A DNA stretch of 63,132 bases, filler included, from Octopus bimaculoides (lineage: Eukaryota), in the NCBI RefSeq assembly GCF_001194135.2. It is 6 parts of 5 records of this genome, joined end to end, with 100 filler letters (N's around TTAATTAATTAA, not from the genome) between each part and the next. Parts side by side here need not be neighbours in the genome. Positions count along the whole stretch, not along the records: positions 49,168 to 57,915 come from NC_068983.1; 5 more parts are not named here. One strand, given 5' to 3'. The translations under genes and the position numbers were made by a program. Each line of letters opens with the position of its first letter. The first letter of the stretch is position 1. Under the pieces are notes generated by a model, which saw only the letters and a list, made by a program, of their open reading frames with translations, had not been told where the DNA came from and made no database searches. This document shows, in pieces, positions 49,168-58,500 of this stretch.

Positions 49168-49200
<33 letters not shown>

Positions 49201-49496
49201 GTAGTATATTGCCACTTAAGTGTGGCTGACCCCTAGGGGTGGATGTTACTGTTGCTTTTAGCCCCAGGAGGACATCTCCTCCAGCTGGCTTATCGACACA
49301 CGACTGTGTCCTGTTTGCCAAGGGAAGTTATCCCTCTCACCATTTCCCAAAGTACCATGCTGTAAGATTGAACCTAAGGCCTCATGATTGCAAAGTTAAT
49401 CATGCTCTAAACTATTTTTGATTTATTTATTTATTGTTTAGCTAAAAATAGAACTGTAAGACACCATTTTAGACATTGTTCTTTCTCATTTTTCAG

Positions 49497-49684
49497 GATT
49501 GCTGTATCAGTGGGAGAAGTTGCGTGCCCTGGCAGTGGAGCGTCAAAGCCAGTGCCGAGAACTGTGCCTACTTAATACAAGTCTCATGACAGTTTACAAC
49601 TGGCTACAAGAGTTGTCGACCCTCATCAAAAAAGAACAGTTCAAAGGCTTACCTGACGCACAACAAATCATCAAAATTACACAG
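49497..49684 (+). CDS. Spectrin-repeat/KASH (nesprin-family) protein, exon n-4
   Basis: Acceptor ttctcatttttcag, donor GTCAGT, phase 1-0: LLYQWEKLRALAVERQSQCRELCLLNTSLMTVYNWLQELSTLIKKEQFKGLPDAQQIIKITQ, with spectrin helix C (W..L...RQ) and helix A (WL.E) patterns. Confidence 0.88.
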
Positions 49685-50627
49685 GTCAGTTGCTGGAATA
49701 AGCTAAAAAGAATTTTATTATCATTAATCTTGCACTAATTTTTATAAAACAATTTTTCTTTGTGAAAAAAACCATTCTTGTCATTTAAAAACACAACTGT
49801 ATTCTAGTCATTGACTCAGTTCCACTGCAATCTTGAAGTAGATCTGTGACAGTGACCAGGTCACTGACCTATAACAAAAATTTTAACATCTCAAAGAATA
49901 AATGGAAAGTAAATTTAAACAGTGTTCTGTGCTTTAAATGGCTAAAATAACTCTTCCGTGATGTAATTTCTTCTGTCTGAATACGTGGTTTCAGATCAAG
50001 TCACAGTAGACTCCTTGACTTTTATTAAGCTTTTTCAGAAATATGAGGAGAGTTATTTTGATTTAACACGAAATGCTTTTGCTAGAGGAGAAATTAGAAT
50101 TGACTGATTTGTATGTGTGCGTAAAAACAACAAATTTCTCAATATACACTCACAGAAAGTTAAGTATTTAGTGTCTGTAGCTACTTCCATACCATAGTTT
50201 CATGCACCTTGTATTGTAGCCAACAGCTACAACAAAGCAAAACAGTAATGTCTTACATTGGCTTATCAGAAAACTCATATCAGTATACTAGTCCATGCAT
50301 AGTTTATCTTGTCAGCTCCATACAATGATAATTCCAAATAGTGCAATTTATGTTTGACTGAGCAGTATCATATTATAAACCACTCAACACCAATAATGAA
50401 CAGAAAATTGGTGCTAATATTGAATTATAGTAGGCAACATGAAATTTTTGCTATCTCAATTTGGGACAACAGATAGAGAACTTGTCACATCATACACAAC
50501 ATAACTTGCCACTGCTTTGTTTTTCACTTCAACTACACCATTCCACTATGTTCAAATTTCATGAGTACTGGCACCAAACAATGGTATGAAAGTAGCTAAC
50601 AATTTGTGTGTGTGTGTGCTGCATATA

Positions 50628-50912
50628 TAGGTGCTGGTGTGGCTGTGTGGTAAGTCTCTTGTACTATAGCCTCAAGCTGACCAAAACCTTGTGAGAAAAT
50701 TTGGTAGACAGAAACTGAAAGAGGCCTATCATGTGAATGTGTGTGTATCTCCGTTTGTCCTCCACTACCACCTGACAACAATGTAACTTAGCAGTAAGAC
50801 AAAAGTATCAGGGTTCAAAAAATAGAATAAGTCCTGGAGTCGATTTATGTAACTAAAATTCTTCAAGGTTGTGTCCCAGCATGGCTGCTATCTAATGACT
50901 GAAATAAATAAA
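50628..50912 (+). mobile_element. SINE family A, diverged, intronic
   Basis: ggctgtgtggtaag...actatagcctc...ttggtagacagaaactgaaaga...cccagcatggctgc...tgactgaaa. Confidence 0.8.
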
Positions 50913-51440
50913 CGATATATTTATACTTTCTACTGTGTGTCTTAATTTCAAGTTATGGAGTTTTCCCTTTGAGTACATATTTCAATGGACATCTGTGATG
51001 TTTGCCACTATAACCTTGTCATTCACAACCTGGTTGGTGAAAGCCTGAAAGAGGACTAATTTTCTTTTTAGCCTCAGGCATTTTCACGTGTTTCACCTAA
51101 AGAGCAAGCTACTTTCTCAGTTTTTCAATATTTAATGACTTTAATCTCATCATGCTGGATTGATTAGCACAGCTATTCTAGATAATCCCTCACTGCTTCA
51201 TTCAACCTATATTGTTTCAATGTTACTTATACTGCTGCTATTACTACTAATAATAGTAAACAGTATTCATTTGTTTTATTTTTATGATTAATTCACTCAT
51301 TATCAGAAGCATTATTGACTTTTTGTCTGTTGTTTTTGTTTTTAAATTTTACTTTTTATCTGTCTTTTCAAAAAAGGAAAAACCTTCTATTTTTCTGAAA
51401 CAATCACAGTAAATAGCTAATGTCTGTTTTATTCTTACAG

Positions 51441-51595
51441 GAAAAGCAAGCCTTATTTGAAGAAAAAATGTCTAAACTGAATGAATTAAAGGAATCAGTG
51501 CTCTCCTTTAAAGAGCAGCACCCAACCATAAGTGTTGAAGGTTTCCTCATGAAGATAGGGAAATGCATTACTGAGTTAAATTCTCTAAGAGATAA
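51441..51595 (+). CDS. Spectrin-repeat/KASH protein, exon n-3
   Basis: ttttattcttacag / GTACGT, phase 0-2: EKQALFEEKMSKLNELKESVLSFKEQHPTISVEGFLMKIGKCITELNSLRD(K). Confidence 0.88.
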
Positions 51596-52539
51596 GTACG
51601 TCTTACTGCTTAATTTTATTTGACTTTAACATTTATTTTTTCTTAAATTTTGACCCTTGCATCTCTGGAAAAGTTAGTATTCTAATGATGATGGCCACTG
51701 TGATGATCATGACAATAAGAACACTATCTCTTGATGCTGTTTAGTTCTGTCAGCCCAATTCAAATAGACCTCTGATCAATGGAATTCCTACTTTGACCAT
51801 ACTGATTATATTTTCAAGTATATCTTTTCGACCATCCTGACTATATTTTCAATGTGTCGTTTTTTTCACAGGTGTGTGTAATTTGAAACCAGTGTTTATA
51901 GGAGTACATTATCTAAAGTCCTTCAGTTTTTTAGAGGTTTTTTTTTTTTTTTTTTTAAAGATGGAAGAGTACAATTTGAGAGAGGTTTGTCAGCTCAATA
52001 TTTTGTTGAGTTAGGCAACAATGGGGGTAATAGAGTGGCTGAAGTGTGAGATTGACAATCCATATTCATGATCATAAATCACATTCCAGATAATATATTT
52101 CAGTGTTTCCATTAATCAGACATCAATGTTTTACATTGCTTCTGACTGACTCACCTGAAAATTATCTAGTGCTAAGGTCAATCTGTCAGCACTGAGGCCT
52201 GTACATTAGATTTTATTATATTCTCTCCACAAAGTGGAGAGCTGGTAGAATTATTTGCATATTAAACAATATGCTAAGAAGCATTTCTTCTGGCTTTTTA
52301 TGTTCAAATTCTGCTGAGATTGTCTTCACCTTTTATCCCTTCAAGAGTTGATAAAATAAGTACCAGTTGAGCACAGAGTCAAACGCAATTGACTTCACTT
52401 TCCCATCGAAACTACTGGCCTTGACCCAAAATTAGAATTATATTTTTTCTCCTCTGAAAACCTTAATATGAAGTACTGATGCAAAATACTAATGCAATGT
52501 TTATATTAAATTAACACTAATTTCTTGTTGTATTTCTAG

Positions 52540-52717
52540 ATGTGCTACAAAACTTCCTCAGTTACAGAAGTACTTATTAGTATGGTATGAGTACAATGAG
52601 ACCAAGAAAGAACTAGACTATATGCTGAGACAGCAACGGCAGCAGTTGGATAGCATAGTCTATCATTTAGAGGTAGATTTACCAAAACATCAACCCAATG
52701 TGCAAAATGATTTAAGA
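52540..52717 (+). CDS. Spectrin-repeat/KASH protein, exon n-2
   Basis: ttgtatttctag / GTGAGT, phase 2-0: CATKLPQLQKYLLVWYEYNETKKELDYMLRQQRQQLDSIVYHLEVDLPKHQPNVQNDLR. The ORF track does not show it; it was found by manual reading. Confidence 0.88.
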
Positions 52718-53436
52718 GTGAGTGCTTGTTTACTTTCATTCATCCCAAGTATCCTCTGATTTCTTTTTTTTTTTTATCATTTTCTTTTTGTCTTTCTTAA
52801 AACAGGAGGCAAAATATGGTGAAACTTAGAAATAAATATTTTAAAGTATAAAATACATTTCCCTATCTGCCTCAGTTAACTTGGTTGAAAATAAAATAGG
52901 TGCCTCTTCTATTTCCTGTAAAGAACTATAAAAATGTAGATTTAAAAAAAAAAATATGAATGCAATTATCTGAACTTCCAGAAATGAACATATAGAGAGG
53001 CATTCAAAAAAAAAACAATGAAGAAAAAAGGAAATGTAATTTAGATTGCTAAGAAGTGAGAGCTGAGCTTTGAGTCTACAAGTGACTAAATTGATGTGGC
53101 TTGGGCAGCCATAACAATATGTCTGATAGCTCAGCAACTTAATATACAAAGACGAGTGGAGTATCTTACTTAAAAATCAAGAGTTGGCATCTGGATAGGC
53201 ATCTTGCCATAGAATATAGCCTCAAAAAAATCTTGTCCAATTCATGCTGGCATGGAAAAAGTGGAAGTAAAAAACTACGATGACGATACTCATGTTTTGC
53301 TTATTTATCAAATGTTGATGATTAGTGGCAGCAGACAAACAAAATGGAAAGAGCTAGAATATATTTGAAATAATCAATATTTGCAGATAAGATGAAATAA
53401 TAAGAGATAAATGAATTGTTACAAATTATTCCGAGA

Positions 53437-53603
53437 TTGAAGCACCCACTACACTCTTGGAGTGGTTGGCGTTAGGAAGGGCATCCAGCTGTAGAAACTC
53501 TGCCAAATCAGATTGGAGCCTGGTGTAGCCATCTGGTTCACCAGTCCTCAGTCAAATCGTCCAACCCATGCTAGCATGGAAAGCAGACATTAAATGATGA
53601 TGA
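53437..53603 (+). mobile_element. RTE-related SINE/LINE fragment ending in (GAT)n; related copy at ~53170-53290
   Basis: ggttggcgttaggaagggcatccagctgtagaaactctgcc...ccaacccatgctagcatggaaagcagacattaaatgatgatga. Confidence 0.65.
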
Positions 53604-53695
53604 ATTAAGTAAATTACGATACATGTAATCAACATATTTCTTGTTGTGTTAGTATCTTCCTTTTAATTTTTGATTTTATTTTCTTTATTATTTAG

Positions 53696-54039
53696 GCTGT
53701 CCAGAAAAGCTTGAGTCTCTGCCAAGAAAAACTTGACCAACTGCAATCTTACCGTCTCCAGTTGACCTGCTATTTGGACCGCTCAGCTTGTGCCGGCATT
53801 TCTGCTGATTATTCTGAATATCGAAGTCTGCTGTTTGCTATAAAACAGCAGTGTCAAAAATCTATCGCCAAGGCAGCTCGGCTCAACTCAAACAGGGCTG
53901 GTAAACCTGCCCGTATTGAACACACTCTACAGGCAAGCAACAATGGTTCGTTAGGCAGAGGTCGCTCCCTTGTGTTTCCTTCCCATATCACTCCTACATC
54001 TACCACTCCTGACTTGGCTAAAGAGGAAACAAATATCAG
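53696..54039 (+). CDS. Spectrin-repeat/KASH protein, exon n-1 (helical region + S/T/P-rich linker)
   Basis: ttctttattatttag / GTGACT, phase 0-2: AVQKSLSLCQEKLDQLQSYRLQLTCYLDRSACAGISADYSEYRSLLFAIKQQCQKSIAK...TPDLAKEETNI(R). Confidence 0.88.
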
Positions 54040-54459
54040 GTGACTTTTGCATTTTTTTTTGTCTTTTTATTGCATCAATTTTTTTTTCTTTGCCAAACTT
54101 TATGGTTATTTCTGTTTAACAAATTATAGAATTTGTTTTATTCCTGTTGGTTTTTAACCCTTTAGCATTTAAACTAACCATATGTGGCCCAATTTTATAT
54201 TCAAACCAGCCAAATCCAACTTTTCACACCTACCCTCATCTCCAACACCATCTATCTCTCATCTACCACTCTGACTCTCTCTCTATCTTTCTCTCCTTCT
54301 CTCTTTTTCAACTGGGGTAGCCGAGTATCTCCCTTAACTTTATCGGTCTGTTATACTCTAACCTCTCATCTGGCACAAAACCACTTTCCATGGTTCCAGT
54401 TAAGTACTAGGATTGATTTAATTAACTAACTTATCCCTCAAATTTACGGCTTTATACCT

Positions 54460-54647
54460 ATGTTAGAAACTAATAATTGTTAACACATTAGAGAAAATGC
54501 TTAGTGGCATTTTTTCTGGCTCCTTTCATGCTGATTTTGCCATGGTTAACTTTGCCATTTATTCTTTGAGATTTAAGTACTGGGATCAATGTCACAATCT
54601 AACCCCTCTCTCTAAAATCACTGATCTTGTGCCAAAATTTGAAACTA

Positions 54648-54685
<38 letters not shown>

Positions 54686-54686
54686 G
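54460..54686 (+). mobile_element. Decayed SINE family B with (TAT)n tail ending just upstream of the KASH-exon acceptor
   Basis: gaaaatgcttagtggcatt...actttgcc...aagtactggg...ttgtgccaaaatttgaaac followed by (att)n. Confidence 0.6.
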
Positions 54687-54717
54687 TTTAATATTATTGT
54701 TTCTATTATTGTTTCAG

Positions 54718-54922
54718 AAGTGAAAATGGAACGCCGACTTCAGCAGTGGCAGTTCCCAGAACTACATCATCTAACTTTCAAAACACAATGCAAGGGCTGG
54801 TGCTTGTCTGCGTAGCAGGACTTGCTTATTTGGCAGACCCTGAAGCTCTTGAGAAGCTAATCAGCTTCTCGATCCAGTTGAACCCCGAGTTAAGATACAT
54901 CAATGGTGCACCACCTATTTGA
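54718..54922 (+). CDS. Terminal exon: transmembrane segment + KASH peptide
   Basis: gtttcag acceptor, phase 2: SENGTPTSAVAVPRTTSSNFQNTMQGLVLVCVAGLAYLADPEALEKLISFSIQLNPELRYINGAPPI* (TGA 54920-54922). P-11, L-9, R-8, Y-7, G-4 and terminal PPx match the KASH consensus. Confidence 0.92.
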
Positions 54923-55519
54923 GGCCCCTATAAAAAAGTTTTGTGTTCAATGATATCTACCCCCATTTTACTACAAAATATTGCAACAATTTTTGTTGTT
55001 ATGGCTTACAATTTTTCTATTCATGATCAACACTTACTGGTACCGATTCATTTTCCAGTGGGATATGGAGAGGGGCACTATTCAGCAGTACAATAATGTC
55101 AAAAGTAAAACGAAATGAATTCATCCAAATTTTAAATTTCCAAGATTTTTAAAACGTTAACAAAGAAACGTCTTTAACAGCAATTTAATATAGATCGCAA
55201 TTTTGATTTATCAACATTTTCCAAATTAACAGGAAAAAAAATTTGTTTATTTTTGGCTTTTTGAACAAAGATGAAAAAGAAAAATTGGACAAAACAATAA
55301 TGTATTTTGAAATTTTTGGCTCTAACCATGATTTCATGTTTTACGACAAGGATTTGATGCTGTTTAATTTAACAAAACAGTCCAAGTATTGCTGAATAGA
55401 TATCCTTTTGTGGTGTGGATTTCAGGCAGCTCCTCCATACCAGTAAGTGTTGTTCATAGCAATTTTATTTAACCCTCGTTTCTAACTAGCTTTGTGTGAA
55501 GTTTAGGCTGTGTAAAATT

Positions 55520-55567
<48 letters not shown>

Positions 55568-58500
55568 CAAAACATGAAATTTAGTAACCAAACCAACACA
55601 GCTCAACAAAGTATAGTTGGCTATATACAGTATTTCAAAATAGGCTGGAACCAGTATATATAATATCTATACACTTATTCAAATTTAGATGAAGGCTTTG
55701 ATTTAAGCAGTGTTCTCTTCCAATATATATATATAATATAATATATATATGTATATATAATCATTTAACACTGGTTGGGAGTTTATTGTGAAAGTTTTTT
55801 ACATCTAGTTGTGCCTATTTTTTTTTAATCTTTTTATCTCTGAAATAAATTAGAGGGTTTTACATTGCATTGAAATGTTTGGGTAATTAAGTGACATTGT
55901 TCATTTGGATGGAATTATTCTTGGGCAATGTTTTTATTTATTTAAATCCGTTTCTGGATTTCAAAAGTCAGAAATTTTATTTTTTTTAAATGCTTCTGTG
56001 GAGCAGAATTTTGGATTGTAGAGAATAATATTTATTTTGTAAAATTATAATTGACAAAAACTGATCTGAACTACTGTTAAGTGACATTTAATTTCAGTTT
56101 TTTTTTTTTACCTGTATTTATATATTTTAGCTTTAATTTATTATTTTTTTAATTTATATATATATTTTTTTCAAATCAAATTTATAATGTATTAAGTATA
56201 CAAATTCTATTTACACATTTAATTCGATATTATTGGGGGTTCCTTTCCAATCCCTTTTCCTTTACATTGTCTCCCTACTCAATTAATTTATAATATTCTG
56301 ATACACATAAAACTGTATTCCTGTGTAATTCTACTCCAGACCCTAGGAATGAGTTTGAATCTTAGTTTACAGTTGATATAATTCAGTTTGGTTATAGAAT
56401 ACTCACATGGAACTGAGAAGTAATAAGGATTTAAATTCCAACATGTAGGGCATAATATTTCCCTTTTCTCTTGGAGAAAAAAATGTGTGGGGCTGGAACA
56501 TTGCAGGTTTAAACATGGTTCATAATCTACATTGTTTAAATACTATCAGCCTGCTTCCAATGAGAAAACGGTAGTTTTTTTTTTTTTTTTTTTTTTAATG
56601 GTTAGTTGAGAATATTCTTTAACTTGTTGGTTAATATCAGCAAGTATTTACAAGTTGAAAGATATGGACCTTGGATTTAATGGCACGAATTAAACATTGT
56701 TTATCAGGTTAACCAGATTTACCATGATGTAAGATTTTCTTATTTTATTGGTGATCAAAACAAAAGAAAACACACCATCAACTGCAGTATTATGACACTT
56801 GCTGTGGGACCAGAATATTGAGTTGGTAATATTAGTGGGAAATCAGGCTATGTAATTACATGAAATGCTTCAAACCATGATACTGGAGCAAATTTAAGAG
56901 GACAGCAAATTTGTTGGCTCTTCCAAAATTCTGTAGTCATTTCAAGACTAGAATTCAACAAGACACTGTAACCTTTCTCGGAATTCCCATCACTGTCATG
57001 GTCTGATTAGTGAACATTAAAAAAAAAAAAAATTATATCTTATTTTTTTAAATAGAAATCTTACATTACCCTTGTATGCAATTGCCTTGTTTTGGCTTTG
57101 CTTATATGATCAAGTGGAGATTACTAGAATACACTAGGTGCTTGCTAGCAATAGCCATTATGTCAAGTCCTGTCAGAGACTGCCAAAACTGTAAACACCC
57201 CTGCCCTCAATCCCCCCCATCACACCTTTTGCCCTTCCCTATTTTTTTTTTGGCCTTCCTGCCCCCCCCCCCTTTTTTTTTTACATCAAATTAAATATGT
57301 TATTTCAATTCCCTTTCAAAAATGACTGACCTTATGAAAGAAGTTATATTTATAAACTCAGAGATGAACCATGTTTAGAGGTTCATGAAACCTCTAATCG
57401 TGGTTCTGATAAATCTTAATATGACTAGTGACGCCAGTTTGATCAGTATTTTTTTTTTTTTGACAGTCATTAACTTAATCGTGATCAAATTTGATTGATA
57501 AGTAAAGGAAATTAGGTGAAGCTTGTATTTGCTTATCCATATACACTGTCACACTCCAAAGGAAATATGCTTGGAGTGACAGAATGTATGCATACATGTA
57601 CACACTCATAAATGTATGTGTATGCATATATATACATATATACATCTGACACATTCCTCTATGTGGGTTATATATATGTTTTGTATGTATGGCAGTATAT
57701 GTAAGTGCTCGTATACACACTAAGTTAGGTGTGGCTACGTACACACTTACATACACTTGTACTTATACAAAACTGATATCCAGAAATGGATTTGAAATGG
57801 CATGTGAATAAATATCCATGCACAAATCCTGCTTAACTATATGCATGCATGTGAGTGTATGTGTGTAGATACATCATTTTACATATACACACACATATAT
57901 ATATATATATATATANNNNNNNNNNNNNNNNNNNNNNNNNNNNNNNNNNNNNNNNNNNNTTAATTAATTAANNNNNNNNNNNNNNNNNNNNNNNNNNNNN
58001 NNNNNNNNNNNNNNNACGACATATAAGCTTTCATAACCTTTTTTTTTTTAATTTTCAGAAAATTCTTGTGAATTTATATTCTACACACGGGAATTCATAC
58101 GATTATGCAAAAAAAAAAAAAAAAAAGAAAAATTGGGTGCGTGATTTAAAGCCTATTGAGCTGTTATTTTAAGCACATCTCACGACTAGGGTACAGGCAA
58201 CAGATGGGCACAAGCCGCAGAACACAGCGTCAACGCACGTGGTTTCGCGTTGAATATATTTGTCAACACATGTGCCTTCTTGCAGACAAAAGTGTTCTCA
58301 TGTGTGGCTTGTTACTATGGAAACAGGCATGAGTGTGTCTGTGGCTTACGATTGGCTAAAATTACCCAACATTTGCAAACGTTAAAAGCTATTAACTTTT
58401 TATTTATTGATTTATGGCTAAAATGAATTTCGTGTCAATTATTAGAATACAAAACTACATCATTACACCAAATATGAAATCAATTGGAACAGAAATTGAA

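What the first reader, a model, noticed from the sequence alone, without database searches (positions are those of the whole stretch)
54718..54922. Atypical KASH domain: APPI terminus, no Cys at -23, short TM
Seen: five exons splice in frame into ~356 aa of spectrin-like repeats, an S/T/P linker, a ~16-residue hydrophobic segment (MQGLVLVCVAGLAYLA) and the luminal peptide DPEALEKLISFSIQLNPELRYINGAPPI. Established: canonical nesprin KASH ends in PPPX, with a Cys at -23 that disulfide-bonds to SUN and supports force transmission. Here -3 is Ala and -23 is Leu. The usual RVLRAALPLQLLLL pre-TM motif and nesprin-1/2 adaptive domain are not evident. From recollection, the spacing (P at -26, ...RYIxGxPPI) resembles Drosophila Klarsicht. 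Inference: a divergent, possibly mollusc/cephalopod-specific LINC component that binds SUN non-covalently.
Basis: partly seen in the sequence, partly recalled or inferred. Interest (0 to 1): 0.7.

Follow-up and report, generated by a model that had tools for sequence, protein, structure and literature searches.

The report
Octopus Klarsicht gene tail (KASH)
This is the last five exons of the octopus version of Klarsicht, a known protein that ties the nucleus to the cytoskeleton; its membrane anchor lacks the usual cysteine (as in all molluscs) and one of three prolines (only in Octopus), a mild variation on a known theme.

Summary
Five + strand exons with AG/GT borders splice in frame into 355 aa ending ...RYINGAPPI-stop. 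This peptide is an exact suffix of Octopus bimaculoides XP_014782353.1 (LOC106877836, 1409 aa; UniProt calls it "KASH domain-containing protein"). An intronless transcript-type contig from a related octopod joins the same five exons. dN/dS between the two is 0.08.

The gene is not a cephalopod-specific invention. It is the mollusc orthologue of Klarsicht: five collinear conserved blocks are shared with a fly protein that NCBI names klarsicht, and the other non-mollusc hits that carry a name are klarsicht proteins, "KASH domain-containing" or uncharacterised.

Arthropod, priapulid and brachiopod orthologues have Cys-Cys at -23/-24 (EPxCCD). All 25 mollusc sequences keep the 28-residue luminal peptide, Pro -26, Phe -17 (one has Leu) and Pro -11, but have no Cys there.

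Among cephalopods, Ala at -3 occurs only in Octopus species. Argonauta, a cuttlefish and a second decapodiform have PPPI. Ala -3 recurs independently in some bivalves and a snail.

The SUN-contact residues Tyr -7, Leu -9, Pro -11 and Phe -17 are kept, so non-covalent SUN binding is the likely mode. The upstream 241 aa fold as two spectrin-like repeats. This is a modest variant of a known kind, and the locus is already annotated.

The parts
49497..49684 (+). Exon A. It corresponds to exon 6 of the 10-exon Sepia model. The first 2 nt complete a Gly codon begun in an upstream exon outside the piece. It encodes LLYQWEKLRALAVERQ...IKITQ, the start of spectrin-like repeat 1.
   Evidence: AG acceptor and GTCAGT donor. 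tblastn of the Sepia orthologue matches here. A transcript-type contig block covers 49495-49685.
51441..51595 (+). Exon B, encoding EKQALFEEKMSKLNELK...NSLRDK.
   Evidence: AG acceptor and GTACGT donor. A transcript-type contig block covers 51437-51595. The exon boundary is the same in Sepia.
52540..52717 (+). Exon C, encoding CATKLPQLQKYLLVWYEYNETKKELDYML...NDLR. This is part of the long helix shared by the two repeats.
   Evidence: AG acceptor and GTGAGT donor. Contig block 52537-52711. In the AF2 model helix 95-159 has pLDDT above 90.
53696..54039 (+). Exon D. It holds the end of spectrin-like repeat 2 (to about 53899) and then a disordered Ser/Thr/Pro-rich linker. Reading through its donor (CAG|GTGA) gives ...EETNIR-stop, a product without KASH.
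   Evidence: AG acceptor and GTGACT donor. Contig block 53695-54042. Residues 246-305 have pLDDT below 50. ORF 53711-54043. The O. vulgaris model P0089 ends at ...EETNIR.
54718..54922 (+). Exon E coding part, which is the finding's coordinates. It holds the end of the linker, the TM segment, the luminal KASH peptide and the TGA stop.
   Evidence: Exact suffix of XP_014782353.1. Pfam KASH PF10541 scores 17.8 bits, below the gathering score of 23.
54788..54835 (+). Transmembrane core MQGLVLVCVAGLAYLA (residues 312-327 of the 355-aa peptide).
   Evidence: It is the highest Kyte-Doolittle window in the peptide (2.01 over 15 residues). AF2 predicts helix 308-327.
54836..54919 (+). The 28-residue luminal KASH peptide DPEALEKLISFSIQLNPELRYINGAPPI. 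Ala -3 is at 54908-54910, Tyr -7 at 54896-54898, Pro -11 at 54884-54886 and Leu -23 at 54848-54850.
   Evidence: It aligns end-to-end with nesprin-1 KASH in PDB entries 4dxr and 6r15 (NFARSFHPMLRYTNGPPPL). It is identical in three Octopus species.
54923..55215 (+). 3' UTR, minimum extent.
   Evidence: The related octopod's transcript-type contig aligns through 55215 within a block (54716-55215) that is 87% identical overall; the contig ends there.
54646..54713 (+). A (TAT)n / TATTGTTATTAT microsatellite that forms the T-rich tract just upstream of the last acceptor.
   Evidence: and the sequence.

Best explanation
The piece holds the last five exons of Octopus bimaculoides LOC106877836, the mollusc orthologue of the outer-nuclear-membrane protein Klarsicht.

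The encoded C-terminus has four parts:
- two tandem spectrin-like three-helix repeats (residues 1-241);
- a disordered Ser/Thr/Pro-rich linker of about 60 residues;
- one transmembrane helix;
- a 28-residue peptide that ends with a free carboxylate in the perinuclear space.

Inferred mechanism. The protein is tail-anchored in the outer nuclear membrane. Its luminal peptide binds a SUN-domain trimer in the kinked KASH1/2-like way:
- the terminal (A)PPI sits in the SUN pocket;
- Tyr -7 and Leu -9 sit in the cleft under the KASH lid;
- the peptide kinks at Pro -11;
- Phe -17 sits in the hydrophobic pocket of the neighbouring protomer.
There is no SUN-KASH disulfide, because the luminal peptide has no Cys.

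The cytoplasmic part lies mostly outside this piece. By homology with Klarsicht it would couple the nucleus to microtubule motors.

Shown here: gene identity, splicing, orthology, purifying selection, fold and residue conservation. Inferred: membrane topology, SUN binding, motor coupling and the lower force tolerance of a disulfide-free link.
For: Identity and splicing:
- The peptide is an exact suffix of XP_014782353.1.
- An intronless contig joins the same five exons.
- The Sepia gene has the same exon structure.

Selection against a related octopod:
- dN/dS is 0.083 overall, 0.032 in the repeats and 0.196 in TM+KASH, at dS 0.36.

Orthology to Klarsicht:
- A profile built from only the two cephalopod sequences finds 86 proteins.
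- The named non-mollusc hits include 'klarsicht protein' entries from Macrobrachium, Anabrus, Bacillus, Hetaerina and the fly Eurosta.
- BLASTP of the octopus protein against fly Klarsicht gives five collinear blocks: KDELWAAI..., the N-terminal repeat, an identical SFSETAWDNYQ, DFYHVL...CQTNIKCLE, and KASH.
- Against nesprin-2, only the N-terminal repeat pair and a weak KASH match are found.

KASH features:
- The tail aligns end-to-end with the nesprin-1 KASH peptide of solved SUN-KASH complexes.
- Tyr -7, Leu -9, Pro -11 and Phe -17 are the contact residues listed in PMC6527376 and in bioRxiv 10.1101/2020.06.19.161265. All four are present.

Fold:
- The AF2 mean pLDDT is 81. Five long helices have pLDDT above 90, and a helix covers the TM segment at 308-327.
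- All top Foldseek hits are two-repeat spectrin, plectin or nesprin structures with probability 1.0 and TM-score up to 0.65.

The disulfide is not needed for binding:
- PMC6527376 reports that a 14-residue KASH peptide still binds SUN.
- It also reports that UNC-83, KASH5 and ZYG-12 work without the Cys.
Against: - Pfam KASH is below its gathering score for the octopus tail (17.8 against 23). Mollusc tails score 15-31 bits, whereas arthropod and brachiopod Klarsicht tails score 49-81 bits. The domain is therefore strongly diverged.
- The PPPX motif is described as required for SUN binding, and here -3 is Ala. No experiment known to me tests a single Pro-to-Ala change at -3.
- No SUN protein of octopus was examined and no complex was modelled.
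- Orthology to Drosophila melanogaster Klar itself was not tested. The fly sequence used is from Eurosta, and its 'klarsicht' label is NCBI's.
- A Haliotis orthologue is labelled 'unc-83-like', and Plakobranchus and Gryllus ones 'A-kinase anchor protein (6)'. Database names are not unanimous.
Confidence: 0.8

Rival explanations
1. A cephalopod- or mollusc-specific new LINC component with no counterpart elsewhere.
For: Only one hit appeared in the word-indexed protein search. Pfam does not call KASH or spectrin in the window part. NCBI labels the gene 'uncharacterized'.
Against: - The exhaustive profile search finds full-length relatives in gastropods and in Lingula, nemerteans, Priapulus and arthropods; the second, alignment-based search adds bivalves, a chiton and annelids.
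- Five collinear blocks are shared with fly Klarsicht.
Confidence: 0.03
2. An ordinary nesprin-1/2 (SYNE1-type) gene whose odd KASH end comes from assembly or sequencing errors.
For: The N-terminal repeat pair of the full protein is similar to late repeats of nesprin-2 (E 3e-44 to the family profile).
Against: - The same GCA (Ala) codon and Cys-free peptide occur in an independent transcript-type contig and in the O. sinensis and O. vulgaris proteins.
- The protein is 1409 aa, not giant.
- Outside the repeats and KASH there is no similarity to nesprin-2.
- A nesprin-type KASH (Timema, Fukomys) looks different.
Confidence: 0.01
3. A decaying KASH. In Octopus, or in molluscs generally, the tail no longer binds SUN, and the protein works elsewhere, for example on ER or on other organelles as the KASH-less Drosophila Klar isoforms do.
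For: - The tail has lost about 50 bits against the Pfam KASH model relative to arthropod Klarsicht.
- The Cys pair and the pre-TM motif are lost, and Pro -3 is lost in Octopus.
- A few relatives have degenerate ends: Babylonia ...NGPSGL, Dimorphilus ...DGAAQ, P0010 ...GPTGQ.
- Reading through the last intron gives a KASH-less product.
Against: - The luminal 28-mer is identical in three Octopus species and differs at only one residue in a fourth octopod at dS about 0.3-0.36. dN/dS is 0.20 for TM+KASH.
- Across 25 mollusc sequences the length (28), Pro -26, Phe -17 (one has Leu), Pro -11, Leu -9, an aromatic or His at -7, Gly -4 and Pro -2 are kept (24 of 25 or all). That is a re-optimised consensus, not drift.
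- The stop codon stays exactly after position 0.
Confidence: 0.12
4. The family is the orthologue of C. elegans UNC-83 rather than of Klarsicht, or the two are the same ancient family.
For: NCBI names the Haliotis orthologue 'nuclear migration protein unc-83-like'. UNC-83, like this protein, lacks Cys -23 and is a motor adaptor.
Against: - No nematode sequence was recovered in either search.
- UNC-83 has a short 18-residue KASH, against 28 here.
- Every block-by-block comparison made here was with arthropod Klarsicht.
Confidence: 0.04

Closest known systems
Klarsicht (Drosophila klar; 'klarsicht protein' of other arthropods)
   Same: - Five collinear conserved blocks, including an identical SFSETAWDNYQ.
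- A C-terminal TM plus a 28-residue luminal peptide with Pro -26, Pro -11, LRY at -9 to -7, and G-x-PP-[IV] at the end.
- Spectrin-like repeats.
- By literature, a dynein-binding KASH protein that needs the SUN protein Klaroid for nuclear migration in the fly eye (PMC6357990).
   Different: - Arthropod Klarsicht has Cys-Cys at -23/-24 (EPxCCD), the pre-TM motif WRVxRAALPxQ and PPPX, and scores 74-80 bits on Pfam KASH.
- The octopus tail has Ala-Leu at those positions, NFQNTMQG in place of the pre-TM motif, APPI, and scores 17.8 bits.
- Fly Klar is also much longer (2359 aa in Eurosta).
Nesprin-1/2 KASH (KASH1/2) in the solved SUN2 complexes (PDB 4DXR, 4DXS)
   Same: - The end-anchored alignment SFSIQLNPELRYINGAPPI / NFARSFHPMLRYTNGPPPL.
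- Pro at -11, which defines the kinked binding class.
- Tyr -7, Leu -9 and Phe -17.
   Different: - No Cys -23, hence no disulfide to the SUN2 Cys563 equivalent.
- Ala instead of Pro at -3.
- No RVLRAALPLQ motif.
- The cytoplasmic part is not a giant spectrin-repeat rod and has no CH domains.
[quoted passage not shown]
   Same: No Cys at -23, so the SUN link is disulfide-free. According to PMC6527376 such a link still moves nuclei or chromosomes. The presumed role as a microtubule-motor adaptor is also shared.
   Different: Those are described as short KASH domains (UNC-83 has 18 residues), and KASH5 has Leu at -11 and binds straight. The mollusc peptide is full length (28 residues), keeps Pro -11 and Phe -17, and has simply replaced the Cys pair.
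Plant KASH proteins (WIP, SINE)
   Same: They bind SUN without cysteines and without a strict PPPX end (consensus (V/I)PT). This shows that the SUN pocket accepts non-proline residues at -2/-3 (PMC13200780).
   Different: They have unrelated cytoplasmic domains and a much shorter luminal part (9-13 aa). They do not share an origin with animal KASH proteins according to that paper.

Membership tests
KASH domain (tail-anchored SUN ligand) | The domain lies at the extreme C-terminus, and the reading frame stops right after position 0 (one extra residue abolishes binding). | tested here: met
   TGA lies directly after Ile at 54917-54919. The end position is the same in all orthologues. The requirement is stated in PMC6527376.
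KASH domain (tail-anchored SUN ligand) | A single TM helix followed by a luminal peptide of about 8-32 residues. | tested here: met
   Hydrophobic core at residues 312-327, AF2 helix 308-327, and a 28-residue luminal peptide.
KASH domain (tail-anchored SUN ligand) | A terminal PPPX motif. | tested here: not met
   The end is APPI. Pro -1 and Pro -2 are present, and -3 is Ala (GCA, 54908-54910). Argonauta, Sepia and another decapodiform have PPPI. Ala -3 also occurs in Dreissena, P0004, P0114, P0007 and P0026.
KASH domain (tail-anchored SUN ligand) | An aromatic residue at -7 and Leu at -9, which are buried under the KASH lid. | tested here: met
   Tyr -7 and Leu -9 are present. Their role is described.
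KASH domain (tail-anchored SUN ligand) | Cys at -23, which forms the SUN-KASH disulfide. This is a feature of long KASH domains (KASH1-4, ANC-1). | tested here: not met
   Position -23 is Leu, and no Cys occurs in the last 30 residues. The same holds for all 25 mollusc orthologues at -23/-24, while arthropods, Priapulus and Lingula have Cys-Cys.
KASH domain (tail-anchored SUN ligand) | Pfam PF10541 at or above its gathering score. | tested here: not met
   17.8 bits against 23 (E 0.0043) for the 67-aa tail. Five of 10 other mollusc tails pass, with scores of 15-31 bits.
KASH domain (tail-anchored SUN ligand) | SUN-dependent localisation to the nuclear envelope, or direct SUN binding. | not testable with these tools
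   This needs cell or binding experiments, or a multimer model. The structure tool here folds single chains only.
Klarsicht family | Collinear conserved cytoplasmic blocks shared with insect Klarsicht, in addition to KASH. | tested here: met
   Five ordered BLASTP blocks against Eurosta klarsicht P0158. The family alignment shows SSCDAS invariant and DSDSD, W-x3-Q and N-x2-C nearly invariant. Most blocks lie upstream of this piece. Within the window, arthropod hits align to exons A-C (profile positions up to about 350).
Klarsicht family | Closer to Klarsicht than to other KASH families when searched without bias. | tested here: met
   Among the 86 hits of the cephalopod-only profile, the non-mollusc hits that carry a name are klarsicht proteins, 'KASH domain-containing' or uncharacterised (one cluster also holds a Gryllus entry labelled 'A-kinase anchor protein'), and none whose name was looked up is a nesprin. 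Nesprin-2 appears only with the broad 16-sequence profile, and only through its repeats.
Klarsicht family | Direct comparison or phylogeny with Drosophila melanogaster Klar, including its alternative LD-domain 3' exon. | not tested
   No D. melanogaster sequence was retrieved. No LD-like alternative exon was looked for beyond a failed search for the O. vulgaris alternative C-terminus.
Spectrin repeat | A three-helix bundle of about 106 residues, with tandem repeats joined by a continuous helix. | tested here: met
   AF2 helices 2-44, 51-88, 95-159, 165-197 and 202-241 have pLDDT above 90. The Foldseek top hits are two-repeat spectrin, plectin and nesprin-2G structures with probability 1.0 and TM-score (normalised to the target) up to 0.65.
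Spectrin repeat | Pfam PF00435 at or above its gathering score within the window-encoded part. | tested here: not met
   There is no Spectrin hit at E<=10 on the 355-aa peptide. PF00435 passes only in the N-terminal part of the full protein (residues 142-229, 33.9 bits).

The most novel reading that the evidence does not exclude
Molluscan Klarsicht may represent a third, so far undescribed SUN-KASH binding mode: a full-length, Pro -11-kinked KASH in which the ancestral Cys-Cys clamp was replaced, once at the base of Mollusca, by a conserved amphipathic segment (DP[DE]xLxxLxxF).

That segment would hold the neighbouring SUN protomer or the membrane non-covalently, giving a releasable or force-limited LINC link. 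In Octopus, Ala -3 would further tune the affinity of the pocket.

If the molluscan SUN partner has co-evolved, for example by losing or repurposing the Cys563 equivalent, this would be a natural experiment on what the disulfide is for.
Probability: 0.15. Interest if true: 0.5.

Novelty: new member of a known kind. Interest (0 to 1): 0.27.

Why it matters
Mostly it settles an annotation. A gene listed as 'uncharacterized protein' or 'KASH domain-containing protein' in Octopus, and variously as 'unc-83-like' or 'A-kinase anchor protein 6' in other molluscs, is the Klarsicht orthologue.

For people who work on LINC complexes there are two small but clean comparative facts:
- A whole phylum has dropped the -23/-24 cysteine pair from an otherwise full-length, kink-class KASH peptide while keeping it under purifying selection.
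- Position -3 of 'PPPX' has changed to Ala several times independently, and position -1 to Ala or Ser.

Both facts argue that the disulfide and the first and third prolines are dispensable for at least some motor-driven LINC functions. They also give natural variants with which to test that. Pfam's KASH model misses many of these proteins.

Tried and rejected
- The word-indexed protein search with the 355-aa peptide gave only one hit, Sepia. The exhaustive profile search was needed to see the family.
- phmmer of the 67-aa and 41-aa tails against PDB gave designed helical repeats first. The nesprin-1 KASH peptides came only at E 0.75-1. This is informative for the alignment but not significant on its own.
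- Pfam on the window peptide gave no spectrin hit and a sub-threshold KASH hit.
- I looked in the piece for the alternative KASH-less C-terminus of an O. vulgaris model (...SSCKDYIRSGAEFSAHEARACSDLQAI). It was not found, so it is either encoded outside the piece or an annotation artefact.
- Rfam at gathering thresholds found nothing in the piece on either strand.
- A literature search for a described Klarsicht-AKAP6 relationship, and one for Klarsicht in molluscs, found nothing on the point.
- The 'unusually short TM' was considered and rejected as a distinguishing feature. The uncharged run is the same length (14, one 15) in the 11 molluscs checked, and 13 in arthropod Klarsicht and in the two nesprin-type proteins checked.
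- The sequencing-error and SYNE1 readings were considered and rejected.
- I did not retrieve an octopus SUN protein, so the state of the partner cysteine is unknown.
Full report
**1. What is in the sequence**

The piece (49168-57915) is AT-rich (22-42% GC) and eukaryotic in look. On the + strand, five open stretches are bounded by AG acceptors and GT donors:
- 49497-49684
- 51441-51595
- 52540-52717
- 53696-54039
- 54718-54922

Joined, they give 1070 nt. The first two bases finish a codon begun upstream of the piece. The rest reads 355 codons and a TGA stop at 54920-54922.

Counting the last residue as position 0:
- -3 is Ala (GCA, 54908-54910).
- -7 is Tyr, -9 is Leu, -11 is Pro and -17 is Phe.
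- -23 is Leu and -26 is Pro.
- The 28 luminal residues contain no cysteine.

**2. Whose gene it is, and whether the splice chain is real**

The 355-aa peptide is an exact suffix of two database entries:
- P0091 = XP_014782353.1, 'uncharacterized protein LOC106877836' of Octopus bimaculoides (1409 aa). Its UniProt entry A0A0L8GDC7 is named 'KASH domain-containing protein'.
- A shorter UniProt isoform.

Independent support for the junctions comes from two sources:
- The Sepia (Acanthosepion pharaonis) orthologue P0001 has 10 exons on locus L001. Its last five have the same boundaries.
- A 4755-bp intronless contig carries the whole 1406-aa reading frame of a closely related octopod (Logan assembly of run SRR3401912, locus L002). 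It aligns to the window in five blocks that are contiguous on the contig and end within a few bases of the predicted junctions. It continues 293 nt past the stop as 3' UTR.

Between window and contig, dS is 0.36. dN/dS is 0.083 overall, 0.032 in the helical region, 0.23 in the linker and 0.20 in TM+KASH. The coding sequence is real and constrained.

**3. What family it belongs to**

The word-indexed search found only the Sepia protein. An exhaustive HMMER search with a profile of just the two cephalopod sequences found 86 proteins.

The close hits are 1100-1900-aa proteins of gastropods: Patella, Lymnaea, Bulinus, Plakobranchus and Candidula.

The distant hits come from Lingula, the nemertean Tubulanus, Priapulus, Limulus, a spider, a centipede, a prawn and insects. 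Several of these NCBI calls 'klarsicht protein': Macrobrachium, Anabrus, Bacillus, Hetaerina and the tephritid fly Eurosta.

A second search with a 16-sequence alignment added more gastropods, bivalves (Sinanodonta, Mercenaria, Mactra, Mya, Solemya, Dreissena), a chiton, Argonauta, annelids and a tick.

BLASTP of the octopus protein against Eurosta klarsicht gives five blocks in the same order:
- KDELWAAIESNYQYLMD...
- an N-terminal spectrin-type repeat
- an identical SFSETAWDNYQ
- DFYHVL...TCQTNIKCLE
- the KASH end

Against a nesprin-2, only the N-terminal repeat pair and a weak KASH match appear.

I therefore read the gene as the mollusc orthologue of Klarsicht. Database names are not unanimous: a Haliotis orthologue is 'unc-83-like', and Plakobranchus and Gryllus ones are 'A-kinase anchor protein (6)'. 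I treat those names as labels, not tests. D. melanogaster Klar itself was not retrieved.

**4. The tail in comparison**

Arthropod, priapulid and brachiopod orthologues read:
...W-R-V-x-R-A-A-L-P-x-Q-(TM)-E-P-x-C-C-D-...-P-Q-L-R-Y-V-x-G-P-P-P-[VI]
They have Cys at -23 and -24 and Pro at -26.

All 25 mollusc sequences (7 cephalopod, 10 gastropod, 8 bivalve or bivalve-like) show the following:
- Nearly all keep the same luminal length (28), Pro -26, Phe -17, Pro -11, Leu -9, Tyr or His at -7, Gly -4 and Pro -2. One or two sequences depart at single positions, for example Ser -26 in Gigantopelta.
- They carry two non-cysteine, mostly hydrophobic residues where the cysteines were.
- They have no cysteine in the last 30 residues. 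The single exception is a Cys at -14 in Babylonia, whose end is degenerate.

The loss of the cysteine pair is therefore a mollusc-wide character, not an octopus one.

Ala at -3 has a narrower distribution:
- Among cephalopods it is found only in O. bimaculoides, O. sinensis, O. vulgaris and the Logan octopod.
- Argonauta hians, Sepia and a second decapodiform have PPPI.
- The octopus codon is GCA in both DNA sequences available. Sepia has CCG.
- Ala -3 also occurs in Dreissena, in two other bivalve-like sequences, in a caenogastropod-like sequence and in P0026.
- Position -1 is Ala or Ser in heterobranch snails and in Mactra.
- Only Pro -2 is constant.

The pre-TM motif survives in snails and bivalves in reduced form, as W-L-[RK]-S-x-P-x-Q. 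In cephalopods it is reduced to a single Gln (NFQNT[MW]QG).

Measured against Pfam's KASH model:
- Arthropod and brachiopod Klarsicht tails score 49-81 bits.
- Mollusc tails score 15-31 bits.
- The octopus tail scores 17.8 bits, and the gathering score is 23.

This explains why the precomputed Pfam column shows no KASH for the mollusc proteins.

The 'short TM' is not a distinguishing feature. The run free of charged residues and proline is 14 residues in nearly all of the 11 molluscs checked (15 in one), and 13 in arthropod Klarsicht and in the nesprin-2 and insect nesprin-type proteins checked. AF2 draws a 20-residue helix (308-327).

**5. The rest of the window-encoded protein**

Pfam finds no spectrin repeat in the 355 aa. 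An AlphaFold2 model built on a 25-sequence alignment (mean pLDDT 81) shows five long helices with pLDDT above 90:
- 2-44
- 51-88
- 95-159
- 165-197
- 202-241

These form two three-helix bundles that share the long middle helix. They are followed by a disordered stretch (246-305, pLDDT below 50) and the TM helix.

Foldseek against the PDB returns two-repeat fragments of spectrin, plectin, alpha-actinin and nesprin-2G as the top matches. Probability is 1.0 and TM-score on the target is up to 0.65, although E-values are only 5e-3 and weaker.

**6. How it most likely works**

From the crystal structures as summarised in the papers read here:
- The KASH C-terminus sits in a pocket of one SUN protomer.
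- Tyr -7 and Leu -9 are buried under the KASH lid.
- KASH1/2 kink at Pro -11.
- A large hydrophobic residue at -17 enters a pocket on the neighbouring protomer.
- Cys -23 forms a disulfide with SUN2 Cys563.

The octopus peptide has every one of these determinants except the cysteine and the first proline. The same literature reports three relevant points:
- A 14-residue KASH still binds SUN.
- The disulfide is needed for maximal force rather than for binding.
- UNC-83, KASH5 and ZYG-12 act without it.

Plant KASH proteins bind SUN with a (V/I)PT end and no cysteines. Drosophila Klarsicht is described as a dynein-binding KASH protein that depends on the SUN protein Klaroid.

My reading is therefore a tail-anchored outer-nuclear-membrane protein that binds SUN non-covalently in the kinked mode and links the nucleus to microtubule motors.

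The steps from sequence to topology, SUN binding and motor coupling are inference. No SUN protein of octopus was examined and no complex could be modelled with the tools at hand.

**7. Rivals**

- A lineage-specific new component is excluded by the family's distribution.
- A mis-sequenced SYNE1 is excluded by independent sequences and by the lack of nesprin features.
- A decaying, non-binding KASH cannot be fully excluded. It is made unlikely by the identical 28-mer in three Octopus species, the dN/dS of 0.2 and the tight mollusc consensus.
- The relation to UNC-83 remains open.

**8. Verdict**

It is wrong about lineage-specificity.

The locus is already annotated, although its Klarsicht identity is not. 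What is new is comparative and modest:
- a phylum-wide loss of the KASH cysteine pair in a full-length, kink-class KASH;
- recurrent relaxation of PPPX to [PA]-P-[PAS]-X.

Noticed in passing
window 54037-54043: The donor of the penultimate exon reads CAG|GTGA. Retaining the last intron therefore stops translation after one more codon (...EETNIR-stop) and would give a protein without TM and KASH. An O. vulgaris gene model (P0089, 1340 aa) ends exactly there. Drosophila klar is known to make KASH-less isoforms. Whether octopus does is untested.
   Followed up: partly
window 54646-54713: A (TAT)n / 12-mer microsatellite of about 68 bp sits directly in front of the KASH exon's acceptor and makes up its T-rich tract. 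Length variation there could affect use of the last exon.
   Followed up: no
outside the window: P0091 residues 97-128, 679-683, 904-914, 975-1035: The full-length family has short motifs that are strongly conserved from molluscs to insects:
- KDELWAAIxxNYxYLMD
- SSCDAS, which is invariant in 16 sequences
- SFSE(T/N)AWDNYQ followed by an acidic W-containing stretch (...ALQWSGEMEFEEE)
- DDSDSDLEDFHH...CxTNIxCL
The two Trp-acidic stretches resemble kinesin-light-chain-binding motifs. That resemblance rests on my recollection and was not tested.
   Followed up: partly
outside the window: P0091 residues 141-355: The N-terminal spectrin-repeat pair of the family is clearly similar to late repeats of vertebrate nesprin-2 (25% identity over 224 aa; E 3e-44 to the family profile). 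Some orthologues are auto-named 'A-kinase anchor protein 6'. A common origin of this repeat pair in Klarsicht, nesprin-1/2 and AKAP6 may be worth a look.
   Followed up: partly
P0108 (Babylonia), P0127 (Dimorphilus), P0010: A few family members end in non-KASH-like sequences (...HDNGPSGL, ...HIDGAAQ, ...HEFGPTGQ). These may be real decay of the SUN-binding end in those lineages or gene-model errors at the last exon.
   Followed up: no
P0020 and P0021 (Logan ORFs): Two short predicted proteins read through the KASH stop codon as Trp (...NGAPPIW..., ...NGPPPIW...). These look like ORF calls made with a genetic code in which TGA is Trp, so they are artefacts of the collection rather than C-terminal extensions.
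   Followed up: no
window 49168-49196, 55523-55561, 55723-55759 and the last ~20 bases before 57915: (AT)n microsatellites lie at both ends of the piece and in the downstream region. The piece begins inside the intron upstream of exon A, and the preceding exon (Sepia exon 5) is not in it.
   Followed up: yes
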